A DNA stretch of 64,000 bases from Asterias rubens (GCF_902459465.1 NC_047073.1:5890001-5954000), one strand, 5' to 3'. Shown: positions 6,935-48,100, numbered from the stretch's first letter. Program-made: numbers and translations. The notes: a model not told the origin generated them from the sequence alone.

Positions 6935-7047
6935 TACCACTAGAAAATTGCTGTACCCCTTCAAGAGCTATATCCGGGTGTTGTCTTACTTGTGGGCTTG
7001 GAATGCAGGCTTGGAATGCAGGGTTGGAATGTGGGATTGAGTGGGTA

Positions 7048-7159
7048 GGGTTGGGGAAAGGCAGGGTTGGGGAAAGGCAGGGTTGGGGAAAGGCAGGGTT
7101 GGGGAAAGGCAGGGTTGGGGAAAGGCAGGGTTGGGGAAAGGCAGGGTTGGGGAAAGGTA
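7048..7159. repeat. 16-bp minisatellite (gggttggggaaaggca) x7
   Basis: Seven consecutive copies read directly. Confidence 0.95.
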
Positions 7160-7329
7160 GGTAGGAGAAGGGGAAGGAATGGTGGACCCTACCTTTTTCA
7201 ACCTGGTGCCCTTAAGCCATCTAAATAAAGATATTTTCTCACCTTTGGCGATTGGGCTTAGGTTAGGGAGCAGGGTTAGGGAGCAGGGTTGGGAGGATTG
7301 AAAGGTAATGGGAGGGGGTTATACCGTAC

Positions 7330-10651: not shown

Positions 10652-10685
10652 CAAAGAGGGTAAAGAGAGCCTGAGGCGTGACGAG
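10652..10685 (-). CDS. PTBP1: 34-nt RRM3 exon (LVTPQALFTLF-G), equivalent to PTBP1 exon 11 / PTBP2 exon 10
   Basis: gcatag|CTC...TTTG|GTATGC; exactly 34 nt; matches VTPQSLFILFG. Confidence 0.96.
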
Positions 10686-12245
10686 CTATGCGACACGTGT
10701 AGAAGGCGAGAGGTTGTGAGGGCGATACAGCGACAATATGACACATAGGAGGCAGAAAGAGGAGAGATGGAGAGAGAGAAAAAAATCAACAATTTTAAAA
10801 ACAATAATCATGTTATTTTGAGGGGGGAAACATTTGGTGCATGGGCATCGTCACCAGGTGGCTAAACTGGGCTATATTATCACCATGATAACGCATCATC
10901 GCAGGCAGTGATCATCTAACTTTATCTAGTCAACTTTCTTTGAAACAGAATACAAAGGAATAATTGTAGTGATTGTTGTACTTTTGTGCTCCAGGTTTAA
11001 CCAGAATTGTTTATGTTTGCATCTATAAAATAATAAGCTCTACATTAACACATGCATATTTTTAAAAATCGCTTTTTAATCTTCTGAAAATATTGTTACG
11101 ATTGCTTTGAAAATTTCAATTATTTGCACTTTTCAAATCAATAAAATGACTAGAAAAATTGCAATGACAAAGCAGCCACACATGTCTAGTTTTCCTGATA
11201 AAATCAACCTTTGAGAGGGCAAGGCCATTTTCATTTTGCAAAGGGCACTTCTATTGGAAAATCTTAACACCTACGTGGATTTTTTGTAGGGCACCATGGC
11301 CAAGGCTAGAGGTCATAGCCCTGGCCTCGGTATAATTCATGAACGAACTTTCTACCCAAATTAAGAATGAATATACAGTTTTAAAGGTGCCATTCCCGCT
11401 TAAATATCACATGCCTCTGTCTCAAGTACACAGACGCATGTACAAAAGTCAAGATTGCCACTTCGTAAAAAGGGGTCTGTATGCAACATGGCAAATATAA
11501 GAATACGACTTGCGTATATACAAAGAAAAGTCATAAAAATGCAGCAGGGAGTATACACTAGGAGTTAAAATCCGTAGCTGAAGATAAATAAAAAGCCGAA
11601 AAATAAGAGAGAATACTGAAGCCCCTCTTACCAGGCATTCAATGAGTTTTAAGGACTTGTCAGAGATATAATGTCAAGGTATGAAACAACTGTAGGAGCT
11701 AAGAACTAAATTGCACAGACTCGGGGGCTGTGACATTAAAACATGCAGAGAAGAACTTCATTTATACATGTATGTGTCAAGACTGGAAGCTGCTGACTGT
11801 GTCTATAAAGGGCTGGGAAATCTGACAAAAGATAACAAGTTTCTAGTTTTGGTTTTGATCAAGCATAACACAAGGATTGAACATACTTATTGATTGAACC
11901 TGATACATGTAAGTCATGCACTGAAGAAAGCATTGAACATTGAATCTGTAAAACTTGTGTGGTAAATACATCCTTATGAGGAGTTGAACATTCAACTAAT
12001 TTCCATTGTTCCATTAGATCACTGGGTTTCATAAAATATTCCTGAAATTAGAAGGCCACTAACTTATTTGAAAAAGAAAAACTTTTAGATTGTTTTTCGC
12101 TGAAAAGAAAGAGTGGTCCTGCCAAGTCTACTCTGAGAGGGAAGTGACTTTTGAAACTTTTTCTAGTGTGTTGAAGTTCACCCTGTCTATTATTCTTTTC
12201 TAAAAAGAAGGCCATCAACTGAGTTGGGAAGGCAAAGCAACTTAC

Positions 12246-17219: not shown

Positions 17220-17385
17220 CCCCTAATCCAATGCCATCTCCTGGGTGGATACCATCTCCCGTTGGTAGGTCACGTGTGTAATCTCTGCTCTTCTCATTGT
17301 TGTATTTGACAACGAGTGCAGGGAGTTTAGAGAACTCAATGTGCAAGGTGCAGCAAGCATTGTAGATATTCTGTCCGTCTAAGGC
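17220..17385 (-). CDS. PTBP1: PTB RRM2 C-terminal exon ([20 protein letters not shown]...[18 protein letters not shown])
   Basis: Near-identical to the PTB signature [19 protein letters not shown]...KYNNDKSRDYT; ttgtag|GCC and GGG|GTAAGG; 166 nt. Confidence 0.98.
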
Positions 17386-17489
17386 CTACAAAAGGAGACA
17401 CAAACATTCTTTAATACCAATAATTCCATGGCCTTTTTGAGGGATGGTGGACACACTAGGAGTGCAGTTTGGTTTGGGTATAATATAAG

Positions 17490-17626
17490 TTATCACACCA
17501 GCGCGAGTGGAATACAAAAAAATATAGCGCTTCTGCCTCCCATATCCAACGAGGCCGAATGCCGAGTTGTATATGGGACGCAGACACGCTATATTTTTTC
17601 GTATTTCACGAGCGCGTGTGTGATAA
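17490..17626. mobile_element. Palindromic non-autonomous element (ttatcacac...gtgtgataa; possibly Crypton-like)
   Basis: Long imperfect inverted arms (gaatacaaaaaaatatagcg / cgctatattttttcgtattt); superfamily tentative. Confidence 0.55.
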
Positions 17627-18159
17627 CAAATTTATCTTCCAGTCTCACTTGCAACGTGCAAAACTTAAAGCTTAAGAGCATTAGTTAACGCGCACAAAGT
17701 TGAGAATGTAATTTTTGCACTGTCCATATACGGAGCGTGACAAAATGACATTTCACAATACGCAGAGAAAGTAGGATATAAAACAGAGGTCGTAGCATAT
17801 ATGTTTTTACCCCCCTAGTAGTTCGAGCTTCTGATTGGTGGATTAGCGCGTACTGGAAGATAAAGACCATTATCATGTTGCAACCATCTTGGACATGTTC
17901 CCTGCCTCCATAACAGTAATGAACACCAGTATTCATTGTAATAAAAGGAACCAGACTATTTCTCATTCCAGCCTCAGTTTGGTTACATTAACTTGAATGG
18001 GGGACACTCAAGATGGCCGTACCATGACAAAGGTCAATACAGACAGATTTACTCAAACCCAACAGTGTCATACATGTAGTATTGTGTCCACCATGTCTCA
18101 AGCCTGGCTTATGCAAATGGTTCTGTAGTCACCACACAGTTTGCTTTAATTGCAAGATA

Positions 18160-18310
18160 AATGGCTCAGTGGTTTCTTTTCTTCCCTTTATCTCTGCGGA
18201 CCCTAGTTCGAATCCAACCTCAGACCAGAGCCTAGCATGTGGATTGGGTTTCCATTAAGTCCCTACTGATTGCGTGGGTTTACTCCATTAGGGTTTTTTA
18301 TCCCATATAA
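18160..18310 (+). mobile_element. tRNA-derived SINE fragment
   Basis: tggctcagtgg A-box-like and gttcgaatcc B-box motifs. Confidence 0.55.
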
Positions 18311-18446
18311 ATTAGTTTGACCACTTTGTCACATTCCCTTTAAATGTATAAAAAACTAATAATAATAATAATAATAATAATATTTGAGCCCTAAACAAAT
18401 ACAAAATCTTACAGTTTCCTAAAGAATGGGCTACTTGTGTACTTAC

Positions 18447-18505
18447 AATTTTGGCATCATTAGCTTCTTTGCTATTGTTGAACTGGATTAGAGCTTGGAA
18501 AACAT
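18447..18505 (-). CDS. PTBP1: PTB RRM2 middle exon (N-VFQALIQF...DAKI)
   Basis: FQALIQF is the RRM2 RNP1; aaacag|AT and ATT|GTAAGT; 59 nt. Confidence 0.96.
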
Positions 18506-18872
18506 CTGTTTGGGAAGAGGACAAGTTAACAAGAGATTAGTTTTAAAACAATTACAATTAGAGCGGTTTATGATATTTAAATGAGGGCCGAATTTGATAT
18601 TTATAAACTTAATTTGCTTGGCAAAAAACAATGTAGGGAACCGTTACAATAAACATCACAAACATCCTGGGTACAAGGTTTGGTAAAAATGGGTCATCCG
18701 TTATTTAATAAGCTTGGGCAGTTTTTGTCTATGGTTAACCATCGCCAAACTATTGGGGTATTCAAACAAAACTACAAACAAAAACTGTGGAATTCAGTGC
18801 TTCCAGCACCAGCCCTTTACAGGGCTAAGCGTGGAACTCTGTGGCAAAAAGTCCCATGAAATAGAGCCCAGG

Positions 18873-19028
18873 TAAAGCCCGGTTCATACTTTTGATGTCA
18901 CATGGCTGTTTTTGCAGCGAATGTTTCGCAGGAGTTGAGCATAAGTCAACCGACGTAAATTATTCATTGCGATTTGTGACGTCAATCGTGTCGCATTCAC
19001 ATTCGCAGGAAGTATGAACTGGGCTTAA
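18873..19028. mobile_element. PIF/Harbinger-like MITE (TAA-flanked)
   Basis: taa-agcccggttcatactt ... aagtatgaactgggct-taa; second copy at 44177-44309. Confidence 0.8.
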
Positions 19029-19074
19029 GATGAGAGATCAACACAGAAGACTGACTTCATTTAGAAGAACTTAC

Positions 19075-19300
19075 TGTTCTTAGTGAAGGTGACTACCTTC
19101 AAGATTGTTCCATACTTGGAGAAGATTTGGTGTAAGGTGTCCACATTGACGGGGTAGATCATGTGTTCAATGACGGCACGGAGTACGTGCTGAGGACCTC
19201 CTGGGCTGTCTGCTACTTTGGGTGACGAGCTTATGGAGGAAAACTGATGCTGAGGCAGGAGTGCTTGTGTTGCTTGTAACGCTGCCTGGGCTGCCACGTT
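19075..19300 (-). CDS. PTBP1: PTB linker and RRM2 start (NVAAQAALQA...VLRAVIEHMIYPVNVDTLHQIFSKYG...FTKN)
   Basis: Clear PTB RRM2 match; atacag|AAC and AACA|GTAAGT; 226 nt, ends in phase 1. Confidence 0.97.
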
Positions 19301-20608
19301 CTGTATAATAGAATGCAGGGAAACAAAGGTGTTAGGAAAACAGTTTTTTTATATTAAACAAATCGCTCATCTCGTTAATTTCTCCAGACATTTATGGGGG
19401 TTGGTTACATGGAGCTGTTATAAGCAGAAGATATTGCTGGGCAAGTTTATTGGCTTAGCAAATATCACCTTAGTACTTGCAGATTGTAAACATAGAATAG
19501 ATTGCCTGTTTCTGCTATACGGGAATTGTACATTAAGCAGCTTAGATAAAGCTTAACATGTTAACCCGAGTTGAATTTCATCCGGTAACAAACTTACTAA
19601 TAAGGCTTTATTTAAAGGTTGCAGCCTTTTGGATTTTATTTTGAAGTTGAGGAGAGCGATAAGATTTTGTGAAAAAGTGCGAGAGGGTGAGATATACACA
19701 GAGATCATAAACAGATAGTATGAGTTTCCAGATTGTTTTTAAGAAACAGAGTACAATAACAGAAATAGTGAAACAATATCAAGTACAGTCAGATAGGTAT
19801 GGCACTTAGTTTTTAAACAGGCCTGGAATCACATTGAGGTCGTGACCTTTGACAACCCCTGTGGTCTTCGTTTTTACATGGCCACCCCTGTTCCCATAGA
19901 CGTGTTGATGTTCTTTTGGCAACGACCCCAGCCAATGTTCAATTCCAGGCATGTGTAAATGGACTTTACAGATGAGATTGAAAACTGTATACAGGTTGCT
20001 CAGAAAGGTCTTTGAACGAACTTTAACTGAAAAGTCAATGCCTGGAGTGAGCATTTCTAAGAATACATGTACAGGACTCCAAAATTGACACTTGACTGCA
20101 AGTCTGAGGCCAGTGATTTCAGAACCTAGGCATGTTGAGCTACAAGCCCTGAAGTCTTGTGAATTTTCGCCCCAAATTTGATAATATAACTTTTCTGTGC
20201 AAGTTCTCACCTTCAAATACATGCACTTTTTTTTCTTCTTTTTTACTTTGAATTTGTGTATTAAATTAGCCAAAGCCTGTCTGCTCACTGTATACAATTT
20301 TTCTAAACAGATAATATATGTTCCATGCTCAATAAAAGTATTCATAAATTATTCTCATCATGGTAAATTATTCTAGGGCATGTGAGATAATTTGACACAC
20401 AGTCAAATTATTCAGAGTCGCTGGAAAGACTTTACTGCTTAAATTCACTTACTGGGGAGTTTCAGACAGTATATGGCAACATACAAACCAGGTAATGTTC
20501 CATTGGTTATGTATTTCTAATGCACAATCAATATCGATCGTCTTTATACGTCTGCCACTACCAAGCAACCCCAAAACACTCCAATTGAAAACTGAAAAGC
20601 ATTCCTTT

Positions 20609-20780
20609 CAGGTCTGATACTTCAAGGAGGCAACCAAGGTGATTACCTCCTTGCCCCCTGGTTATTGCCTTGGTGCCCTTGAAACGCTCAAGTAGTAACT
20701 TACAGTTTCATCATAGGGTGCCTTGCATCCCATATAAAATGCCTTGGTGCCTTTGCCCTTTCAAAAAAAAACATGCATGA
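20609..20780. mobile_element. CAGG...CCTG short element (hAT-like MITE family)
   Basis: Shares ggtcattgccttggtgccc...gccctttcaaaa with 36137-36271, 39856-40025 and reverse copies near 11200-11340 and 31840-31900. Confidence 0.7.
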
Positions 20781-21397
20781 TTGTCTAAAACAAATTTAGT
20801 GGAGGACAAATTTTCCCCGTACATTTATATACATGTATGACTTAATAATGCGGTTTTGCCTTGTGCCACAGCAGCATAAAAAGTGTGCAGAGTCACTCGA
20901 TTCCTAACATATGGTGACTTTCTGGCATTTAAATGTCAATGTAACATCCCTGAAAGAACAGAGCACCGTGTAGTTTGGAAATTAAAATGTTAATTGTATC
21001 TGGCATGACATCCAGGAAGTTCAAATGAATCAAATTTCACTCTTTTTTTTCTAAAGCTGAAACTCTGTCTTTTTTTTTATTTTTCAACATTTTGTTTATT
21101 ATCAATATCAAGCATTGTGTTTGGGATTATCACAGGAGGACTAAAACAGTCACTTTAAATTTTGTTTGTGGAAACACCACGTGTGTATTGCCAGGCAGAT
21201 TTAGTTCTTTCGAGGGCTGTCTGGCTTTATATTCTACTACCGCAGAGTAGGTTTTCGAGAAAATCGATCGGCTTTTCAATTTGTAAGGGTAGACTTGAGC
21301 ATGGAACATATAATACGTTGTTTATTTTATGTGTAAATGTCTTAAGGTGAAGAAGATGGAAATATAAGAAAAGATAAAAAGAGACACCAACAGACAC

Positions 21398-21514
21398 GGT
21401 GTTCTTGTCCAGATTGCCAGAGTAGGAGTCACTGTCTGGGAGGAGAGTCCCTGACGAGGAGGGATTGTTTAGCACAGCATTCACAGCAGCAAGGGCAGCC
21501 TGTACCGCCACCGT
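21398..21514 (-). CDS. PTBP1: Candidate alternative cassette exon in the RRM1-RRM2 linker (TVAVQAALAAVNAVL...SGNLDKNT)
   Basis: Acceptor cttcttgtag|ACG in phase 0; peptide resembles PTB AQAALQAVNSV..SGNL; donor uncertain (ACC|GTGTCT gives 117 nt in frame, TTG|GTGTCT at 21388 gives 127 nt and a frameshift). Confidence 0.6.
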
Positions 21515-24500
21515 CTACAAGAAGTAGGAAGTTGAGAAGAGACGAGGCGAAAGGGAAGAGGGAGGAGGATGAGGAGTGTGGGGAGTATGGTGAGAGGTGG
21601 CATTGGAAGAAAGAGTATTGGATTGAGGGAGATGGGAGGAATTTAAAAGGGGTAGAAATGGGAGGAGTCATGCAAAATGGGAGGAATCATGCAATGTGGT
21701 TGGAGCCAGGCATTGTGGGAGGAGCCAGACAATGGAGTGAAGCCATTGAAGTTGGATTAAAGGTGCAATTGGATTATTTGGGATGAGATGAGATTGAACA
21801 ACGGACAGATTCAAGATTTGATGAAGTCAAAGAAAGAGAGATGAGCAGAAGACAAGTATGGTTATAACATTGGGGGATCCAAAATGGGTTGGGTTACAGT
21901 AGGAGTGGATCAACAGAAGGGCGGAGTCACAAAAGGGGTGGGGTCACAGAGGGGTGGAGTCACATGAGGGGCGGAGTCACAAAAGAGGGCGGAGTTACAG
22001 AAGTGGTAAAAACAAAAAGTTGACAAAGCAAACAATCATGATCAACATGACACACGGGGAGGTCAGCAAGTGAGATCAAACCAAATGTGGGTGATATAAA
22101 AATAGACAATTTATTTTTTTTAAGTGAGGTGAGGTGAAGGAAGTAGGTGAAGCAGAACAAAATGAGGATTTGAGCCAGATGGCATTGTATGAGTTCCACA
22201 AATAGAGAAGCGTTTTGATTAGTGGACCAAGGAAGGGTCAGGTAAAGGAGGAAGAAAAGACAAAGAGTTAAATGACAGATCAAGTTGAAATCAAAGAATT
22301 ATAAATGTACATGTTTTTTTCAAGAGGAACATGTTTACATCCATGATATAATAATTAGGTTGTGATGTGAAATGAGAAAGAAGTTGATAAGGTTATGTCA
22401 AGATGGATTGGAGGAAAAGAAATTATGAAAAGAGAAAATAAAAAGAGAGTTAAGGCTGATTAGAAATTGATTTCCACATTTGGTTTATATTTCTTTCAGT
22501 AATACAATATTGAAAACCAAGACTAACAACAACTTGTAGAAGGTATTGATGAACTAAAACTGGGAAAAAATGTTACTATCAAAAGTGACAAAGTTGTTTT
22601 CTATTAGGAGAAATGGTTTTCGACATTGTGGCTTTTTGTACAATTATCTTGTTTCCTTAATGCATTAAACATCATCGCAACTATAGTGAATGTGCGTAAC
22701 TGAAGTCTTCGATCAAAATGAGACACTTCTCATTTGCCATAATTTGAAGGTCTCTGGTATTGTCTGGACTCTGTCCTATTAACTAAAATGGTCTGAATTG
22801 CTACAGGACTTTGATTTGAGTCCGTAAAACCGAGTTGATTTTGATGAATTGCAGAGTTAAAGTAAGTACCGTTGCATTGTATTGTGAGTTGCGCCCCCCA
22901 GTGTCCTATACACAATAAGATGTTATAGTGTTAAAGGATTGTTAAGAAAGGATGCAATTTATTTTATTTTTTCAAACAAACAGCGAGGGGAAAATTAATG
23001 AGAGTAAAAAAACAAGTTAGCGATAAATCATACAATAAGTTAGGAAATGAACGTGAAAGTTTAATAGATGATTTTATAATGATGTGAAATAGCGGTTGAA
23101 GTTAATGTTGAGGATGAAGGATTGAAGTATACGTTAAGAAATGGTTTAAGGCCAGGAGTAAGAGAGGAGGGGTGGTAGGTAGAGGGAGGAGAGATGATAA
23201 GGAGGATGAGAAATTAAAGAAAATTGAAGGTGATGGGAGTGACGCAACCAAAGGAAAGACAAGATGAGCAGGGATGTGGAAAACGCATGAGTACAGAGAT
23301 GAAGACAAATTCAAGATGAGGAATCAAACGGGGAGATATGGGGGAAAGTTGGAGGAGGTTTTCAAGAAAGATGAAATCAGAAATGAAGGGGAGAAACAGA
23401 AAAAGGAAGAGGAAAATGGGAGAGATAAAAAAATAACAAGATGTTAGCATTCAAGGCATCAGATATGAATCAAAAAAGATGATTTGCAGAGAACAGATGC
23501 ATAAGTTTCTTTTCAACAATTAACAAAAGAAAAACAACTTGTGCTGAAAAAGTTTTACAATGTTTTCTAATTACCAAAAAAATTAATTCAGCGAGAAGTT
23601 TGAGGGTTTATTTTGAAGTAAGAATCAGAATGGATCGGGATGCATGTGAAACAACATAGCATGATGAAGCACACGAATCGACACACAATCAGAAGGATAC
23701 TCTACAACAGTAATCCCCGGTATTTTGAGGGGACAAGCAAGGACGAACAACCCTTTTTCACAGCATTCCTTTCTTTCTACACACACACAAAGTATTATTC
23801 GTTTTCAATGACAATTGTTTGTCAAAAAGCCTTAGGACTGGTAAGAGTGTTGGCTCTAAGGACGGTCGCCCATGGTAACACTACACGTTGTTATTTCAAA
23901 TGTGTGTAGAGCAGTACAGCAAACCAGAAGCCTTTGATACAGTACACGGAAATTGTGCCTAGCGGCCCTGATGCCCCCCCCCCCCCCTCCCCTCCCCTAA
24001 ATAGAATTGGGACTGGTGAGACAAATTTCTTTCGTTTTTTTCCCCCGCTTTTTTTTTTTTTTTTTTTCAGCACCTTTTCTTTGCTGGACAATGGAGGAAA
24101 TGTTGTTCCCTACTGGGATGAATTGTGTGACTGTCTGGAATGTACAAGGGTGTCTGGTTAGGAGCGATAATTGGTTTACATTAGCACCGGTATAGCACAA
24201 CAGGTGTATTGCTGAGAAATTGGGGGAAGGGTGGGGGAAACAGCATTGGAGATATCTAATGAAGGAATTTTGCAATCTTCTGTATCCAAACAGCTTTTCT
24301 TCTACTTTCTTGAAGGTTTTCTTCATCTAGTGTCAATACAAAATAACAACAAAAGCAACAACTAATTAAATACAAACACACAAACCCCCCCCCCCCCCAC
24401 CCAGACAAGCAGACCAAAAGAACGGTTTTAAATTCTTCACAATTTAAAGACGAACCTACATTTAGACTGTAGAACTTGTACAGATGTGTGGTTACTGGCC

Positions 24501-25732
24501 AAATGGTAAAGTTAACTGGTGTTTGGCTAAAAGTGGTCCAGTGGGTATTTCAAGCAATGGCATTCCTTTCTAAATCTTGACATAGAACTTTCATTTACAA
24601 AATGTCTTGAAAAAAATTGGGACCCCCTCTTTTTGTAAAAAAAGAAAAAAATTGCAAACCCCAATTTAAAATTATGCTTAGAACCCTTACACAGATATCT
24701 ACCCCAACCCTAATTACATACTTTACTTGGAAGGTTCTTTTCTTTCACATTCTTCACCTCTACCCCTTATATCATAAGCTGTGTAAACACAATAAGTAGC
24801 TGAGCAAAAAATAGTGTCGGCGACCAGAAATGGTTTACCAGCCAAAATACCATTTCACATGTACAATAATAATTTGTAACTGGTTTCCTGTTCAATTTAG
24901 CTAAGCCAAAAATTTGTTAAGCACTTTTCTTTTGTGGCCTTGCCGGTAACATTTGAGTTCCGTCTCCGAAGTTACACTAGTTCTTGACATGCTGGCCACA
25001 GACAGTGGCTGAGACAATCTTGCTTTTAGTTCAACGACAACTAAAACTCTCGGCCGGCCTCGCTGATCTTGTTTACCTGTATCCCCGATAGATGTTGTCG
25101 TTTTGCGCAGCGATTCCTTAATCCCAAACGAATAGATTAACGGCGCCTATGAGTGGTTTGTACACCAGGGCTTGGCTAAGGTGACATATTTGCCGGGTTG
25201 CCGTGGTTACAGTCTATTCACGGTTTGGTCTGAGAATAGCGTATTCAAGAGTCGTTCCGCAGCAGTGCAAACTTGACACCTTGCGAGGGGGAATTAATCA
25301 TGCATGCTTGGGTTTTAATCCAGCCGGTGTCTTTGTGCATTTCTCGACAAGATGGCCCAATTTTTACGATGAGAAAATGCATTTTATTACATACACATTA
25401 ACTTGAGAGAATCGGGGAGTGATGTTAAGCGGATGCTGGCTTGCGCATTAAAGCGGATTTGCACCCCACCTTAACGGTCAAGGGTTGTGAAATCAAACCA
25501 GGATGGAATTTGTGAGAGCGCTTTAAATTACCCCCCCCCCCCCCCCCCCAACCCAGAGGGTATTATGTGTAATCTGTAGTACTTTTATATATAAATATTC
25601 AGGTACTTCGCCTTTTTAGGGGTATCATGTTTTTATATGCAACGGCAATAATTAATTATGGGCCACATTGTTGGCAAAGAGAAACATCTTTGAGCTTCAG
25701 TCATTGGTAAGGCATTGCAGATTATTGCAACA

Positions 25733-26040
25733 TTATTGAGATCGACCAGTGCAAAAAACTTGAAAAGCCCAATGTGAAAATGAGACCAGTGAAACAAACT
25801 TGGAAAATTCAATGAAAAAAATAGGACCGGTGAAAAAACTTCCTCTACAAAATGAAACCTGTGAACAAAAAAATTGATGGCTCAAAGAGAAAATGAGACC
25901 AGTAAAAAATAACTTGGAAAGCTCAATGCCAAAATGAGACTGGTGAAAACAATTTAGAAAACTCAATGAGAAAATGAGACTGGTGAAAGAAAATTGGAAA
26001 GCTCAATGACAAAATGGGACCAATGAAAAAAACTTTAGAA
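25733..26040. repeat. Degenerate tandem repeat (aaaatgagaccagtgaaa...aacttggaaa.ctcaatg)
   Basis: About six recurring copies of roughly 45-55 bp. Confidence 0.75.
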
Positions 26041-28628
26041 AATGGGTCGTCATTTTGCCATACAAAGGTGTCGCATGATATCATTTTGTTGTTCTACATG
26101 GCATGTCACATCCATTGCATCCATAGTTAAACACAGAGTATAAAATTGAGCTCAGCTTTCTATTTCCAGCCCTGATACTTCAAGACGGCAAATAGTCCTA
26201 TTGCCTCTAACTTCTGCCGCAATGCCCTTCAATATCCCCTTTTCACTGAAGTTTTCAGTAACCTATAAACTCAAATCCAATTTATGGTGTCAAATTTTGT
26301 CACTGTTTCTCAAAGAAATTTTGCTTTTGACATTACAATTTGTGCAAAAAAACCGCTTAAACTTGATACAGTACACTTTTTTAAAGTGTTTATGAAGATC
26401 CTCTCAGTCTCTTGCCGGAAAAAAAAACACAGAGCAGGTTTTCATTGAATTTATCTCTTCACAAATATCCTTGGATTTTTACAGCATTAAATAAATCCTT
26501 CAAAATAATTGCGTTCAAATTATTTTGACAAATAACGAAAACAAATCGCACAACCGGCTAGGCTTGACATAAATAGTTGGCGGCAAGGCCAGCCTCTTTA
26601 CGGGACCATGAATTATTGCCTGATTGCTCCCGGACAAAATGACGGCTGTCCATTATTAAATAATAGCAAATAATAATGACGTCTTTATAACGTGGATATC
26701 CAAGAAAGTGTTTTGGTGGTTTTTTATTTTGATTACATAGATGATGACTGTAAAGTACGATTTGATTGATCAGTTTGTGAAAATGTCTGCAGGAGGGAGG
26801 AGGGGGGGGGTTCATTATTGGCAAGCACTGAGCAGAAAAGAGGATAAAACGGGAAAGGACTCAAAGGTAAAACAATTCTTTCCGCCAGCTCTCTGAGAGT
26901 AACATGGGGGCATAACTTGGATCATCCATTAGGACTGTCTCCTCGTTCGATTTTAATTCAAAGGGATAGAGCGGGATGATGCAATTTATTCTCCAATATC
27001 TGAGATTGACGGAGACTGATCGGCCATTGATTGTGCCCTGACACAATCGCATCTAAATTAGCCGCTCATGTTGTCGTCAACGGGCCAAGGTTGTTTTGTG
27101 GACACTCATCATTTCCATCTTAACTGCCCCCAGTGAGGAGGCAATTTTATTTTCAAGTCAAATTCCCTCAAGTAATTTTTTTTTTCTTTTCCCAATTCCC
27201 AAAAGGTCACTACAAAACAAATTATCATCGAACCATCTCCAGTTTTTCAAACTCCCAAGAGTGACCAATCTTCTGAATTGCAAATATTGTTCTTATTTTT
27301 CTATATATACATATAACAAATCTCAGAGAATCTATCAGTTCACGCAACATAGATTAAAAACCCTGTTATGATTCTTCTCGAGGCTTTAATTGGCTCAACC
27401 CTTTAAAAGCAAACCCCTACCCCCCCCCAAATCCCTCACTTCGAAGTTGAGGTGTTTTCTGTGATAGCACAATTTAGCAGCAGCTTAACTCCACTCCAAA
27501 TACTGCCAGTGGCATAGTGCTATACAATTTCACCGTCTTATAAATTATGCAACGACGTTCAACGTCGTCATTGGATCGGAAAGCGGGAAAAGCCTGTATC
27601 GGATAAGCGCAAGGTCTTAAAATGCACTTCAGGTTGTACCCAGGCGTAATAATGAGTTTGCGCAACGTTACACCGAGTTAGAACAAGTTCCTGTTCAGTT
27701 GGTGTGAAGAAGTTAATGCATCTAATACCCTGCGCCCTAAATTCATATTTTGTTACACACGTCAAATCCACTGGCACTCAACGGTACTTGATTTTTCACT
27801 GAGTGGTTCCAGTACTAGGATGGACTCGTTGAAAATTCACTTTCTGTGTTTTCGGGAAAATACTGTCATGCTTACTTGGAACGGGATGGTAGAGCTCTTT
27901 TGTTTATAAAAGAAATCTGACTCCTGCATATTCTGCTTATTGATATGTGTCATTCACAAACAAAATTATGAAAAGGCAAATTTTATGAGCATTCGTGTAC
28001 AACTATGTCGCAGATATAAATGTACAGGTAATTGTTCTGTGCAATATGTTCCACAACAACACTTTTGTCAGACTGTCCGTTCTTTCCTCAAAAAGAAACT
28101 TCCCTTCAAAAAAAAAATAGTGGTTTGATCCCTTGTTAATTTATAGGTAAAATTCAACAAAATAACAGAACCAGACCATTCTGTGGGCCTTTTATGTAAC
28201 ACAGCAATTAAATTTATACATTTTACAAACAAATGATAACAAAATAGAAGCAACCAGGTTAAGAAGCCATTAAAAAATATTTAATTTAAAAAGTTAATTT
28301 AAAAAACTTAATAAGCAAAATTGTACTCTGAAAAATTGACTAATGGAATTTGTGGAGGAGATGGTGAACAGCGCAGTAATGTAATATTCGTGTATGCCTC
28401 GTGCAGCCAAGTAATTTCCCTGTAATTGTAGCAATTACCTGATTTCGATCAATATGAGGAAAGGTTCAAGGTATATTCAGGTTAGTCTAATGTAGTTAGT
28501 CATGCAAGGTTATCAGTAATCGTTATTAATTATTAGTATCGGCCTATATTTTATATTTTTGACTTGGTGCTACTTAAGTGAAGCTTTGTATGGTGTCAAG
28601 GATCAGAATCAACTATAAGTAATAGTGG

Positions 28629-28882
28629 ACTTGCAGGTACAACTATGTAAAAATTCTCCCCCTTTTTTTCCTCTTTTTTCTGAGGGAGTGTTGGCTCTGA
28701 AACGAGCCAGTTTTGGTCTCGATGCTCCTAACTGCATACTCTGGTCGCCTTCGGGAGAAAAGCTGGAAATCTTCCTCAGCTTTCTCCTGAAGACGAGCAG
28801 AATATACTAGTCGAACACTGGCTTTTTTCAGAGCCAACACTCCACTAAGAGAGAATCATTACATGGTTGTACCGGTAAGTTT
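28629..28882. mobile_element. Head-to-head inverted pair of Penelope-like/retrozyme terminal units with decayed hammerhead cores
   Basis: Both arms are homologous to the 54130-54535 units (gagccaacactcc, tttctcctgaaga). Confidence 0.6.
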
Positions 28883-29777
28883 AATTTCTATTTATAGATT
28901 ATTCTTAGTGCTGCTTTCCAAAAACCTTCTTTCCAGCGCAAGAATGCATGTTTGTTGCATGCAAGTTTGTTGTGAAATCTTAGTCTCCATCCAACTGATG
29001 GTCTGATTGAGTCAGTGAAAGCGTTATTCCGTGTCTGCGACGGTAAATTATAAATGTGATTCCACGACTCCGTTCGGCGATCTTTTGGAGTTTGTGTTGG
29101 CTCTAGGGGTATCTGGGCTTCATGTACACGCACATCAATCGAGCCAAAGTAAATTACAATCTGATTAATACATTTCCCACGGGGAACTCTTGACTTCAAT
29201 GATCTATCAGAATACTTTAGAGCAAGGTAACGCATCGCTAAATCATTTGTAACCTGCTGAAAGATGCAGGATGTCTCATTGGGTCAGGGAAAAGCTCATC
29301 GGCTTCCATTAGTGGCGACAGGTAATGGAGAACGTTTTATGCTTTGTCAGAGATGCTGTATACGTTTATCTGTTTACATGTAAAGGCCTTGGGGAAAAAA
29401 GGGAACCAATAGCAATGGCCAGGGTGCCCTGTGCTTTTGCTGTGGTGCCAGCTGCAAAATTTACATTTCCCTCCTAGAAGTGCCCCTTTCCAGTGGAAGA
29501 TTGCTGTACCCCTTCAAGTGCGAAGTTCAAGGCCGCCAATAGACTTTTCAGGCGATTTAATATTAATTTTACAGATATTTCTGAGTGCCAAAAGAAATCG
29601 GTAATCAATCTAAAATAGGAGAAATATCATGCCTTTTAAACTTTGACAAAAACAGAGAATGGATTTTTGGAACAGTTGGGGTTTGTTAGGAGTGGAAGTC
29701 GAAGATGGAAGATGTTTAAAGGTTGAGAATTGAGATGGAGCTTAACAGCGGGTGTGTGTTCCTGATGATGAACCTAC

Positions 29778-29924
29778 CTGATGTGCCGGGGAGTTATCTG
29801 TCTTCAACTCCTGATGGGTGGAGAACTGGACAAAGACAGGCTTGCCGTGCAGTGTAGTCGTGACTTGGTTGTAGTAGGATATCATTTTTGTGGATTGGCT
29901 AACATCGGCAAGCTCTATAAATGC
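29778..29924 (-). CDS. PTBP1: PTB RRM1, C-terminal part (AFIELADV...VQFSTHQELKTDNSPAHQ)
   Basis: Matches PTB AFIEM...IQFSNHKELKTD; atttcag|GCA and CAG|GTAGGT; 147 nt; missed by the ORF track. Confidence 0.96.
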
Positions 29925-45019: not shown

Positions 45020-45118
45020 CTTTTTGGCATCGTTAATGGGTGAATCACCACCGCCGAAGGTAGAGGCGAGGGGATTAGTGGTGGTACCGTTTGGTGTGAA
45101 CAACTCATCTGAGCCCCG
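45020..45118 (-). CDS. PTBP1: PTB exon with NLS/PKA region (RGSDELFTPNG...INDAKK)
   Basis: Matches PTB KRGSDELF...KK; acceptor ccacag|CGG, donor AAG|GTAACA; 99 nt, phase 0-0. Confidence 0.93.
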
Positions 45119-48100
45119 CTGTGGTTGGTGGACGAAGGAATGGAACGAGCGAGTGTAACGAACGAGCGTACGCACGTACAGGACGGAGGTGAAGAAGAGA
45201 ACCGAGAGGAGAAAAAGAAACAAAAGTGGAGAAAAAAAATGCGGCAAGTCAGAAGAGGGAAGTATGAATGGACAGAGGATGGTTAAAAACGACGTACATG
45301 CAAATGGACCTTGCCCCCAAAACATTTCATAGCAACACACTGGTGATATTAAGCAGCTTTTTGGAAATTGTTGAAAATGATAAGATAAATTAACCTTTTT
45401 GTTGTCTGACCAATAAGACAATTTAGGTCTTGTTCCTGAATGAAAACACAATCAATTCAGCTTTGCTGACTGACGACAAAGGAGCACAAAAAACGCTGTC
45501 ATGTTAATTAATTTCAAATGACAGGTAATAAAGGCTCTTTCATTAAACTGTTTCTGTATTACAATAATTTTTTAACACCATGACTTTTTTTTTCTTTCAT
45601 GGGCGCTAAAATATTTTGGAAAAGGTCCATTTTAAATGTAAGAATATTTTAAGCATAAAAGAAACACAGTTGAATAACAGTTTGTATTTAGGGTACCATA
45701 ACCAATCCAGTCCAAACAAAAACAGCGATTATCCTACAGCGACTAACACATAGAAAAAGTGATTGTTCTTGTAGTTATTAAGGTAAATAACTGCATAAAT
45801 AATAAGACATTAAAAATGGCAAGAGATGTCCACCCCCTCTGCGCAATGGAATGCCCCAACGAAAGCATGATTTCCTACACGTATGGGAGGAGGATGCAAA
45901 ACAATGTGCGACCAGCAGGGGTGTGTGATAGAATAACATCAAACATAATGTAGTATTAAAAAAGCACGGGCGGGGGGGAAAATAGCTGTGATGAAGAAGG
46001 GTAGTTATAATTAATCAAAAAATTCAAACTACAAGAACATGCAAAATAAATGCAGCTTTTACGTCTGAATTCGTGCAATGATTGGTGTTAACGAAAAAAG
46101 GATGAAACTTGTTTTCACTCTCTGTCCTCGAAAAAAAAATATATATAGTCAAGAAATAGTTTTGAGAAGTTGACCAAGTTGAGATGATGGACACCCACAG
46201 CGCTTAGGTTACAAAGTATTTGAAGACGATAATTAGTCAGGTTTTAATGGAGCAGAAGGCCGGGGGGGGGGGGGGGGGGGGGGGGTTTCAGAACAGGAAA
46301 AAAAAAAAAAACTTTTGAAAGAGAGGATGTGGAAAGTTTACGTCCAATTAATTTGCAAAGGTCATTTCACGGGATGGACTTTCTAGAAGACTCCATCTTT
46401 GTTTTTTTGTCAGTGACAAGAACTTTTCCACCTGTATCCTAACATAAGCAATAAATTATCTGCACTCTACACACACTAATTTATACAAGTTAGCAATACG
46501 CATCCTGTGCTACATTAAACCCCGTCTCCTTTTGGTGATTTACTGGGATCCTTCCTCAATCTAACAAAATCCAATACCAAATGGTTACTCAACACTGAAA
46601 TTGTTGGACTCTGATTATTATAGTACGCATTCTCGAGACCTGGTCTCAGTTTTATGACTGTCTCACGACAATTTCTCAAGATCGTCTTAAGATCGTCTTA
46701 AGACCGTCTTGAGACTTTTCTTAAGAAATTTATTGTGGTGAGGAAGGTTGTTTTTACATTAAAAACAATTCCCAGATAAAGAACGAATTTATTTAAAAAT
46801 AGAAATATATATTGGAAATGAGATGATGAAATCCAAATTTCTATTGAGCTTCTCACATACATTACACATCGATCCTGTTTCAGTGCCAAATCAAAACCTT
46901 CCCATCTATTATAAACTTCCCACCAGAGCCCTAGTCTCGAACACTGTAAATGAGATCTTTAATATGGCTCTTCCAAGACAAGATTGTTAAGTGGAAAGAG
47001 ATTCCACAAGTGGTTTCCTCGGGCTCCTACTAAAGCGCCTTCCAATTCCACCAAGTCTTTTTATTCAAGAAATAATCATCACCATGCATCATCCTCCTTT
47101 GAGGAGCAACCCATCCTCAAGGACCTTCTACCAATAACCACCTTTATAAATCTCTTTCATTAGTTCCTCTTTTTGTCCGTCACAAAAGACCAGGGATATT
47201 TTTTATATACATAAAAACCATCCCTGTATAGATACTTAACGAGGTACAGTAACAGCGTTACCATATTTGCGGATCATTTGCGGATCCGACTAGTAACAAA
47301 AGGGCTTTAATTCTCAAGGGGACGGCAGACACAGCACCGTCTCCACTTCTTATTCTCCTCTCCTGAAAAGCACAGGATTTTAATTTGATTTGCTCTATAT
47401 GTCTTGGGACAGACGGAACATTTCCGAGACAGTCCTTTGATTACACAATCTAAGTGACATTAAAAGGACCTTCACAAGGACTAGAGTAAAGTAGGGACTC
47501 TGGTCTGGTACGACGAAGGACAAATCCAGTCCAGCAGGAAATCTTAAAGGGTAGACTCATAAATTTATGTCAAGTTCCTAAAACATTTACAGAGGAATCA
47601 CAGTAACCCAAACACTGAGTCAGGGCTGGAAATACTACTAAATAGATCACTGGCTAGAGTGTAATATTTTCCAGTTACCACCCCACCCCTTTCCACAAAC
47701 TGAAAAAGTGTTGTTGTTTCAAAACACATAAATTGAAGATTACCAATATATGCCTGCTTGAGCTTTGTATACTGTGAAGGCGACCGGCCACTTAAAAACT
47801 CTGCAATTATGTATAAAAAGAGAAACATAAATACTTTGGGTTTGGCGTCAAATCTTCTGCCAAGTCTCATGACATTTATAATCTGCAAATTGTCTACTGG
47901 AGACTTTCTCACATATTCAAGCCCTGCAAATCTAGCATTTGCATGATACACAAAACTAGCCCCTCCTCCTGCCACTAAACATAAATGGTCTATTTACCCA
48001 GTCCAATCTTACCAACAAACAAGTCTCAGACAAACAGCCTTCACACAGTTACTATGTGATGTAGTTGTCAGATACACAGCCAGAGCTTTAGACAAAAGCT

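What the first reader, a model, noticed from the sequence alone, without database searches (positions are those of the whole stretch)
19301..29777. Candidate multi-cassette distant-branch-point switchboard in the RRM1-RRM2 intron
Seen: this one intron holds three AG-free, pyrimidine-rich zones on the pre-mRNA strand (601, 939 and 177 nt). Each starts near a branch-point-like motif and ends at an AG opening a short exon-like segment: one with a stop, one duplicating the helix after RRM1, one a 28-nt stop exon. Known: long AG exclusion zones mark distant branch points and regulated exons, and PTB binds such CU tracts. The classic vertebrate PTBP1/PTBP2 autoregulatory switch is the 34-nt RRM3 exon, not this intron. 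Inference: a second autoregulatory layer that I do not know to be described, choosing among full-length, linker-extended, RRM1-only or NMD products.
Basis: partly seen in the sequence, partly recalled or inferred. Interest (0 to 1): 0.85.

Follow-up and report, generated by a model that had tools for sequence, protein, structure and literature searches.

The report
Two real exons behind giant AG-free tracts
The supposed single 10.5-kb intron of this PTB (polypyrimidine-tract-binding protein) gene holds two real, in-frame, jointly used alternative exons that lengthen the link between the first two RNA-binding domains, and each follows an unusually long (601 and 939 nt) AG-free, CU-rich tract of the kind PTB itself binds.

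Summary
The AG-free, pyrimidine-rich zones are real. On the minus (pre-mRNA) strand they measure 601, 939 and 177 nt. The two long ones hold no AG where base composition predicts about 9 and 16, while GA is at expectation. They are the longest gaps of any dinucleotide in the window.

RNA reads and assembled transcripts show that two of the three candidate exons are used. E1 (22905-22870, 36 nt) and E2 (21514-21392, 123 nt) are spliced to each other, and E2 is spliced to the RRM2 exon. Both are in frame and have no stop. They sit in one transcript piece, and they appear to be alternative: about 26% and 69% of RRM2-exon depth in two runs, and near parity in a third.

Together they add 53 residues to the RRM1-RRM2 linker. 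That includes a second copy of the short helix that follows RRM1. The 28-nt stop exon has no read support.

So this is not a four-way switchboard and no NMD product is shown. It is a coordinated, in-frame double cassette behind very long AG exclusion zones that are 4-9 times richer in PTB motifs than the intron around them. PTB self-regulation and distant branch points are plausible but untested. Conservation in other echinoderms could not be tested. The same first-stage scan noted other very long AG-free zones elsewhere in this genome.

The parts
29778..29924 (-). Second RRM1 exon. It ends ...SPAHQ in phase 0 with donor CAG|GTAGGT. It is the inferred upstream partner of E1.
   Evidence: tblastn to named PTBPs; translation. 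The E1-E2 unitig carries 30 further bases beyond E1 whose last two are AG, as this exon's are.
22908..23508 (-). Z1: 601-nt AG exclusion zone upstream of E1. It is 72% pyrimidine, with 30 YTCTYY-type PTB motifs per kb.
22870..22905 (-). E1: 36-nt in-frame cassette exon of 12 aa with no stop. Its donor is weak (ACG|GTACTT).
   Evidence: Joint 21514->22870 in 4 raw reads (X19) and in the 219-nt unitigs of X13 and X14; translation
21517..22455 (-). Z2: 939-nt AG exclusion zone upstream of E2. It is 71% pyrimidine, with 39 PTB motifs per kb. It contains two short tandem-repeat blocks (21656-21734 and 21880-22007).
21392..21514 (-). E2: 123-nt in-frame cassette exon of 41 aa. Its first 16 residues are a predicted helix that duplicates the post-RRM1 helix. 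Its donor is weak (TCT|GTTGGT).
   Evidence: Joints 19300->21392 (6 reads in X19; unitigs at 8.8x in X13 and 40x in X14) and 21514->22870; helix prediction; alignment
19598..19625 (-). Candidate 28-nt exon with an in-frame TAA, behind the 177-nt zone Z3 (19628-19804). Its use is not supported.
   Evidence: Depth 0-0.7 in the 19450-19649 bin that holds this candidate exon (up to about 3 in the next bin, over Z3), and no listed joint. The acceptor has an A-rich, poor pyrimidine tract. The zone is not exceptional.
19075..19300 (-). First RRM2 exon. It begins with the constitutive copy of the helix (NVAAQAALQATQALL).
18447..18505 (-). Small 59-nt RRM2 exon that the protein alignment missed.
   Evidence: Joints 18503->19075 and 17384->18446; sequence
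17254..17385 (-). Third RRM2 exon.
10652..10685 (-). 34-nt exon encoding ...VTPQALFTLFG, the counterpart of the vertebrate PTB switch exon. It is preceded by a 174-nt AG-free, CU-rich zone (10688-10861).
   Evidence: Its usage was not tested.
45020..45118 (-). N-terminal exon (RGSDELF...) preceded by a 189-nt AG-free pyrimidine tract (45121-45309).

Best explanation
The stretch between the RRM1 and RRM2 exons of this minus-strand PTB-family gene is three introns, not one. They are separated by two real cassette exons, E1 (36 nt) and E2 (123 nt).

The two exons are spliced together, stay in frame, and are included or skipped as a unit. Inclusion inserts 53 residues into the RRM1-RRM2 linker. 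Twelve spacer residues from E1 push the helix region away from RRM1. E2 supplies a second, more vertebrate-like copy of the alpha3 helix followed by a disordered Ser/Asp-rich tail.

Both exons have weak donors. Each is preceded by a very long CU-rich tract from which AG has been purged. I read these tracts as extended polypyrimidine and silencer platforms. They hold many UCUU/YUCUYY sites, so PTB itself is the prime candidate repressor. High PTB would favour the short-linker form and low PTB the long-linker form.

AG is absent because any AG placed behind such tracts, or behind a branch point inside them, would be taken as an acceptor.

Shown: the zones, the exons, their junctions, their frame, and their co-occurrence. 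Inferred: alternative use (from a unitig break and depth ratios), the E1-to-RRM1 junction, PTB binding, the direction of regulation, and the branch-point positions.
For: - Zones and statistics.
- Junction reads and unitigs: 19300->21392, 21514->22870, and a 219-nt unitig laid out as 30 nt of RRM2 exon, 123 nt E2, 36 nt E1 and 30 further nt.
- The RRM2 unitig ends exactly at 19300. Its depth is 12.8 and 156.5 against 8.8 and 40 for the E1-E2 unitig in X13 and X14. In X19, E2 depth (about 13-17) is similar to the RRM2 exon (about 14-17).
- Frame and absence of stops.
- The only two differences from the RNA source inside E2 are synonymous third positions (my codon count).
- AG-free zone per acceptor: 21-100 nt for ten ordinary exons, against 601 and 939 here.
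- PTB motif density is 30-39 per kb in Z1 and Z2, against 4-7 per kb in the flanking intron.
- Helix prediction for E2 residues 2-16.
- E2 matches the constitutive helix in 9 of 14 positions (7 of 2000 shuffles reach the score) and matches a vertebrate PTBP1-like linker.
- Precedent: PTB exon 11 has a 381-nt AG-free zone with a verified branch point at -351; Fugu has 590; all studied distant-branch-point exons are PTB-regulated (PMC1431707).
Against: - No direct evidence exists for PTB binding or for any response to PTB level.
- The skipping isoform was not seen as a read. It is inferred from assembly-graph structure and depth.
- The RNA runs carry an organism label that may not be the window's own, and they differ by about 1-2% in exons.
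- In X19 inclusion looks high, so in some samples the exons may behave almost constitutively.
- Z2 is C-rich and partly made of tandem repeats, so other pyrimidine or poly-C binders and simple repeat growth are live alternatives.
- Conservation of the zones in other species could not be tested.
Confidence: 0.5

Rival explanations
1. Passive by-product. E1 and E2 use ordinary proximal branch points. The long CU-rich tracts grew by slippage and tandem duplication of pyrimidine-tract units. AG is missing only because any AG arising behind a strong pyrimidine tract creates a harmful cryptic acceptor and is purged. There is no PTB feedback and no distant branch point.
For: - E1 has good branch-point candidates at -37 (TCTTAAC), -112 and -135. 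E2 has weak yUnAy sites at -56 and -77.
- About 200 nt of Z2 are tandem repeats.
- AG is the most avoided dimer in pyrimidine tracts generally, sea urchin included (PMC10946897).
- An AG-free tandem repeat with no exon exists at 7010-7188.
Against: - About 730 nt of Z2 are non-repetitive and still AG-free, against 12 AG expected.
- Ordinary exons of the same gene have zones of only 21-100 nt.
- The two extreme zones sit in front of exactly the two alternative, weak-donor exons.
- E2 has no CURAY-type branch motif within 549 nt of its acceptor.
Confidence: 0.28
2. The tracts are regulatory but are read by other pyrimidine or poly-C binders (PCBP/hnRNP K, hnRNP C, TIA, U2AF) rather than by PTB. 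The gene would then be a target of another factor and not self-regulated.
For: Z2 is 32% C, with repeated units such as CTCCGCCCC, CCACCCC and CTCCTCCC. CUCUCU cores are rare, at about 2 per kb.
Against: UCUU and YUCUYY motifs are 4-9 times enriched. PTB genes are known to regulate their own and each other's exons through exactly such tracts (PMC1431707, PMC1940037 abstract).
Confidence: 0.15
3. Three independent cassettes with branch points at the far ends of the zones would choose among full-length, linker-extended, RRM1-only and NMD products.
For: The acceptor at 21514 is seen in junction reads and the one at 22905 is implied by the unitig. The 28-nt segment would introduce a stop and a frameshift.
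Against: - E1 carries no stop as spliced, and E1 and E2 lie in one unbranched unitig.
- There is no coverage or listed junction for the 28-nt exon. NMD targets can be rare, so absence is weak evidence.
- No truncated product is evidenced.
Confidence: 0.06
4. E1 and E2 are plain constitutive exons that a reader without tools missed. The apparent skipping would be an assembly artefact or come from a paralogue or allele.
For: In X19 the depth of E2 equals that of the RRM2 exon. No skipping junction was listed.
Against: Unitigs break exactly at both flanking exon edges with 30-nt overlaps. The depth ratio is 0.26 in X14 and 0.69 in X13. Both donors are weak.
Confidence: 0.08

Closest known systems
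Vertebrate PTBP1 exon 11 / PTBP2 exon 10 self-regulated switch with a distant branch point (Wollerton 2004; Gooding 2006, PMC1431707)
   Same: It lies in a PTB gene. It is an alternative exon behind a long CU-rich AG exclusion zone (381 nt in human, 438 in nPTB, 590 in Fugu). PTB is the expected repressor.
   Different: Here the exons lie in the RRM1-RRM2 linker rather than before RRM3. There are two of them, used together. They are in frame, so they change the isoform and do not trigger NMD. The zones are longer (601 and 939 nt). The 34-nt counterpart also exists in this gene, with only a 174-nt zone.
Distant-branch-point exons of alpha-tropomyosin (exon 3) and alpha-actinin, and the class of human exons with AG-free zones of at least 150 nt (165 of 67,334 introns; PMC1431707)
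   Same: A long AG-free pyrimidine tract between a possible branch point and the acceptor, an association with alternative splicing, and PTB motifs.
   Different: No branch point is mapped here. The size is beyond those cited. The organism is an invertebrate.
Mammalian PTBP1 exon 9 isoforms (PTB1/2/4), which are in-frame linker variants between RRM2 and RRM3. This comparison rests on my own knowledge and was not checked here.
   Same: In-frame alternative exon use that changes the length of an inter-RRM linker and thereby possibly the protein's activity.
   Different: It affects a different linker, involves a single exon, and duplicates no helix.
Predicted insect PTBP isoforms with an insertion at the same site (Anabrus simplex X3 = P0254, Zootermopsis X7 = P0268, P0252)
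   Same: The insertion comes directly after the RRM1 '...KTD...' segment. In Anabrus the inserted piece is itself a second AHAALQ-type helix placed ahead of the constitutive AQAALQ helix.
   Different: The sequences are unrelated to E1 and E2. These are automatic gene models. Their genomic context could not be read because the genes span 423 and 903 kb.
Transient alpha3 helix of PTB RRM1 (Gln144-Val154; Maris 2020, PMC7192611)
   Same: E2 begins with a predicted helix containing QAAL..V. Its Leu and Val align with Leu151 and Val154, the residues that pack on RRM1.
   Different: With E1 included, this helix starts about 14 residues further from RRM1, and a second copy follows in the RRM2 exon. 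Docking was not tested.

Membership tests
PTB / hnRNP I (PTBP) gene | RRM1-RRM4 segments in PTB order, with best matches to named PTBPs | tested here: met
   tblastn of 12 PTB-family proteins places 9 or more collinear exons on the minus strand. The query proteins are named PTBP by NCBI. Pfam RRM_8 and RRM_5 match single exons.
PTB / hnRNP I (PTBP) gene | 34-nt exon just before RRM3 whose skipping shifts the frame | tested here: met
   The exon 10685-10652 is 34 nt, encodes ...VTPQALFTLFG, and has AG and GT borders. Its alternative use was not tested.
Exons with an extended AG exclusion zone or distant branch point (Gooding 2006) | AG-free zone of at least 100-150 nt directly upstream of a used acceptor | tested here: met
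   601 nt before E1 and 939 nt before E2. Use of the acceptor at 21514 is shown by junction reads; use of the one at 22905 is inferred from the unitig.
Exons with an extended AG exclusion zone or distant branch point (Gooding 2006) | Branch point mapped towards the 5' end of the zone | not testable with these tools
   Only motif scans were possible. E1 has both proximal and distal candidates. For E2 the first CURAY motif is at -549, with weak yUnAy sites at -56 and -77.
Exons with an extended AG exclusion zone or distant branch point (Gooding 2006) | The exon is alternatively spliced | tested here: inconclusive
   A unitig break at both flanking exons and depth ratios of 0.26-0.69 indicate an alternative path. 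No skipping junction read was listed.
Self-regulated unproductive-splicing (AS-NMD) switch | Inclusion or skipping creates a frameshift or premature stop | tested here: not met
   E1 is 36 nt and E2 is 123 nt. Both are in frame and without stops in the used frame.
Self-regulated unproductive-splicing (AS-NMD) switch | A poison exon is actually used (the 28-nt candidate at 19625) | tested here: not met
   Depth is 0-0.7 in the bin holding the candidate and no joint is listed in four runs. Low abundance of NMD targets means absence is weak evidence.
Self-regulated unproductive-splicing (AS-NMD) switch | Splicing choice responds to the protein's own level | not testable with these tools
   This needs knock-down, overexpression or CLIP.
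RRM1 alpha3-type helix | Helical segment with the conserved QAAL..V hydrophobic pattern after RRM1 | tested here: met
   E2 residues 2-16 are helical in the AlphaFold2 model, with pLDDT 75-82. QAALAAVNAV aligns with QAALQAVNSV of P0032. Packing on RRM1 was not tested.

The most novel reading that the evidence does not exclude
E2, and perhaps E1, would be spliced from branch points 550-940 nt upstream of the acceptor, which would be the longest branch-point-to-acceptor distances known. The roughly 1.5 kb of CU-rich RNA would be a sensor of PTB concentration that toggles a helix-duplicating linker module, giving feedback on protein activity instead of protein amount. This would be one case of a genome-wide class of kilobase-scale AG exclusion zones in front of alternative exons in this animal. 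Other first-stage notes report zones of 0.55, 1.76 and 3.9 kb elsewhere in the genome.
Probability: 0.18. Interest if true: 0.8.

Novelty: new variant of a known kind. Interest (0 to 1): 0.6.

Why it matters
PTB is the textbook repressor that acts through long pyrimidine tracts and distant branch points, and its own exon 11 is the model case. This gene adds a second, differently wired layer. It is an in-frame double cassette in the RRM1-RRM2 linker behind AG-free tracts longer than any cited for PTB genes.

If PTB reads these tracts, the protein would tune the form of its own RRM1 helix and linker, and not only its dosage. That helix and linker are thought to set the relative orientation of RRM1 and RRM2 and to sense RNA structure.

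The locus is also a clean natural substrate for asking how far a branch point can lie from its acceptor. Together with the other very long zones noted in this genome, it suggests a systematic survey in echinoderms would be worthwhile.

Tried and rejected
1. Retrieving echinoderm PTBP proteins or isoforms to check annotation and fetch orthologous introns all failed.
   - The representative search gave only distant PTBPs.
   - The full-length query turned out to be a shrimp protein, and its top 120 hits were all arthropods.
   - Exon-sized queries found no echinoderm fragments.
   - Scaffold-plus-exon alignments were misaligned by paralogous RRMs and were not used.
   - Two metagenome scans found nothing (one search was a size slip).
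2. Insect loci with an insertion at the same site could not be read. The isoform look-ups were not on record, and the longest isoforms' genes span 423 and 903 kb.
3. Two short contigs carrying RRM2-exon ORFs from unknown invertebrates (L001, L002) were too short to show an upstream cassette and have no long AG-free zones. A third had no DNA.
4. BLASTP of E2 against the RRM2 exon gave nothing. A Smith-Waterman comparison with shuffles was used instead. There is no DNA-level similarity between E2 and the RRM2 exon, nor between Z1 and Z2, so a recent duplication is rejected.
5. No plus-strand ORF explains the purine-rich complement of the zones.
6. Run X20 had no coverage of this gene's exons and is uninformative.


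Full report
**Observation**

On the minus strand, which is the pre-mRNA strand of a PTB-family gene, the window holds AG-free stretches of 601 nt (23508-22908), 939 nt (22455-21517) and 177 nt (19804-19628). The two long ones are 71-72% pyrimidine but are not simple repeats. Only about 200 nt of Z2 are short tandem repeats.

AG is specifically missing. Block shuffles that keep local base composition expect 8.6 and 16.2 AG, and 1 of 20,000 and 0 of 20,000 shuffles reach zero. The mirror dinucleotide GA occurs 9 and 21 times, as expected. These are the two longest gaps of any dinucleotide on either strand of the 64-kb window.

The 177-nt zone is not exceptional. Similar zones occur elsewhere, including inside an exon-less tandem repeat at 7010-7188. 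No plus-strand ORF accounts for the purine-rich complement.

**Gene model**

tblastn with PTB-family proteins (named PTBP by NCBI in shrimp, wasp, anemone, fish and others) places collinear exons on the minus strand from 30759 down to 3751. Pfam RRM_8 and RRM_5 match single exons. (19300).

Reads also revealed a 59-nt RRM2 exon (18505-18447) that protein alignment had missed. The 34-nt exon that corresponds to the vertebrate switch exon is present at 10685-10652.

**RNA evidence**

Two searches for runs and one laying of reads were available. I laid two raw RNA-seq runs and two runs held as Logan contigs, all carrying one species label, on 17250-23249.

The constitutive junctions appear as expected: 17385/18447 with 10 reads and 18505/19075 with 15 reads in X19. 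Two further canonical GT..AG junctions appear:
- 19300 joined to 21392, with 6 reads in X19 and one contig each in X13 and X14.
- 21514 joined to 22870, with 4 reads in X19 and the same contigs.

The contig is a 219-nt unitig. Its layout is 30 nt of the RRM2 exon, the 123 nt of 21514-21392, the 36 nt of 22905-22870, and 30 further nt whose last two bases are AG, as are those of the RRM1 exon. Hence E2 (21514-21392) and E1 (22905-22870) are real exons and lie in the same transcripts.

The unitig ends exactly k-1 bases into both neighbouring exons, and the RRM2 unitig starts exactly at 19300. That is the signature of a branch in the assembly graph at both exon edges, meaning an alternative path exists. 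Unitig depths are 8.8 against 12.8 (X13) and 40 against 156.5 (X14). In X19 the per-base depth of E2 (about 13-17) is close to that of the RRM2 exon (about 14-17).

I therefore take E1+E2 as a jointly included alternative module whose inclusion ranges from about a quarter to most transcripts. The skipping junction itself was not among the listed rows, so alternative use is inferred.

The 28-nt candidate at 19625 lies in a bin with depth 0-0.7 and has no listed junction. X20 did not cover the gene.

**What the exons encode**

The RRM1 exon ends in phase 0. E1 is 12 codons (DTGGRNSQYNAT) and E2 is 41 codons, with no stop in either.

E2 begins TVAVQAALAAVNAVL. This matches the start of the RRM2 exon (VAAQAALQATQALL) in 9 of 14 positions, and 7 of 2000 shuffles reach that score. 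It also matches QAALQAVNSV of a vertebrate PTBP1-like linker (P0032). There is no DNA-level similarity, so any duplication is old.

AlphaFold2 on E2 alone gives a helix for residues 2-16 (pLDDT 75-82) and disorder for the rest.

In human PTB this segment is the transient alpha3 helix (Gln144-Val154) of the 42-residue RRM1-RRM2 linker. Leu151 and Val154 pack on RRM1, and the helix is thought to set the RRM1-RRM2 orientation (PMC7192611). E2 keeps both Leu and Val. The constitutive copy has Thr at the Val position.

Inclusion therefore roughly doubles the linker, moves the first helix about 14 residues away from RRM1, and leaves two helix copies in tandem.

The two differences between the window and the RNA source inside E2 (21452 and 21455) are both synonymous third positions (my codon count).

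**Splice signals and the zones**

For ten ordinary acceptors of this gene the AG-free zone is 21-100 nt. It is 174 nt for the 34-nt exon, 189 nt for an N-terminal exon, and 601 and 939 nt for E1 and E2.

PTB-type motifs (YUCUYY/YYUCUY) reach 30 and 39 per kb in Z1 and Z2, against 4-7 per kb in the adjoining intron. UCUU reaches 21-23 against 2-5 per kb.

The donors of E1 (ACG|GTACTT) and E2 (TCT|GTTGGT) are weaker than those of the flanking exons (CAG|GTAGGT and ACA|GTAAGT).

Branch-point motifs give no decision:
- E1 has TCTTAAC at -37, CGCTAAC at -112, TCCTAAC at -135 and TGCTAAC at -539.
- E2 has only weak yUnAy at -56 and -77, nothing more until -224, and its first CURAY motif (TGCTGAC) at -549.

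**Interpretation**

The architecture is that of known PTB-repressed exons: an alternative exon with weak signals behind a long CU-rich tract from which AG is excluded.

Gooding et al. report a zone of 381 nt with a verified branch point at -351 for human PTB exon 11, 438 nt for nPTB and 590 nt for Fugu. Only 165 of 67,334 human introns reach 150 nt, and all studied distant-branch-point exons are PTB targets (PMC1431707). Distal branch points are linked to exon skipping and slow splicing (PMC5378181).

I therefore favour regulated inclusion through these tracts, with PTB itself as the likeliest reader. This would be feedback on isoform choice, not on dosage, because no frameshift or stop is produced.

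The main rival is passive. Pyrimidine tracts that grew by local duplication would lose AG simply because any AG behind them would be a harmful acceptor. That general avoidance is documented, also for sea urchin (PMC10946897). Against a purely passive reading, about 730 non-repetitive nt of Z2 remain AG-free (12 expected), and the extreme zones sit in front of exactly the two alternative exons.

Other pyrimidine or poly-C binders remain possible readers, since Z2 is C-rich.

**Comparison and novelty**

An alternative insertion at this very site exists in predicted insect isoforms. In Anabrus the inserted piece is itself a second AHAALQ-type helix. A helix-duplicating cassette in this intron is therefore not unique to this animal, but I found no paper describing one.

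I could not retrieve echinoderm PTBP proteins or orthologous introns. Whether public gene models already contain E1 and E2, and whether the zones are conserved, both remain open.

First-stage notes on other parts of this genome report AG-free zones of 0.55, 1.76 and 3.9 kb in front of alternative exons. These notes are unchecked, but they suggest this is a recurring design in this genome.

**Verdict**

Two of the three predicted exons are real. The 'switchboard with NMD and RRM1-only outputs' is not supported. What remains is a new variant of a known kind: a coordinated in-frame double cassette in the PTB linker behind record-length AG exclusion zones. Self-regulation and distant branch points are plausible but untested.

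Noticed in passing
window 10652-10861 (minus strand): A 34-nt exon encoding ...VTPQALFTLFG is the counterpart of the vertebrate PTBP1 exon 11 / PTBP2 exon 10 switch exon. It sits behind a 174-nt AG-free tract with the highest CUCUCU/UCUCU density in the window.
   Followed up: partly
window 45020-45309 (minus strand): A 99-nt N-terminal PTB exon (RGSDELF...) is preceded by a 189-nt AG-free tract that is 76% pyrimidine. Whether this exon is alternative is unknown.
   Followed up: partly
window 18447-18505 (minus strand): A 59-nt RRM2 exon was missed by protein alignment and revealed only by junction reads.
   Followed up: yes
window 20650-20849, 18850-19049 and 17450-18050: Intronic pieces show very high RNA depth (200 or more in raw reads, thousands in contig depth). 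The reads are only 90-95% alike and mostly continue into unlike sequence. These look like fragments of abundant, expressed repeat families rather than products of this gene.
   Followed up: no
window 7010-7188 (minus strand): A tandem repeat with a unit of about 16 nt (CCCCAACCCTGCCTTT, about 8 copies) forms a 179-nt AG-free zone with no exon behind it. It shows that repeats alone can make such zones.
   Followed up: partly
window 25744-26035: A 40-nt-period tandem repeat of about 7 copies lies in the upstream part of the intron.
   Followed up: no
proteins P0254, P0268 and P0252 (insects): Predicted PTBP isoforms of Anabrus, Zootermopsis and an unnamed JGI transcript carry an insertion directly after the RRM1 '...KTDQTHSNA' segment. 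In Anabrus the insertion is a second AQAALQ-like helix. This suggests recurrent or ancient cassette exons in this intron across phyla.
   Followed up: partly
same genome, other windows (notes s1-150871, s1-178630, s1-172739): First-stage notes report AG-free zones of 3.9 kb, 1.76 kb and 550 nt in front of alternative exons of other genes. This may be a genome-wide class.
   Followed up: no
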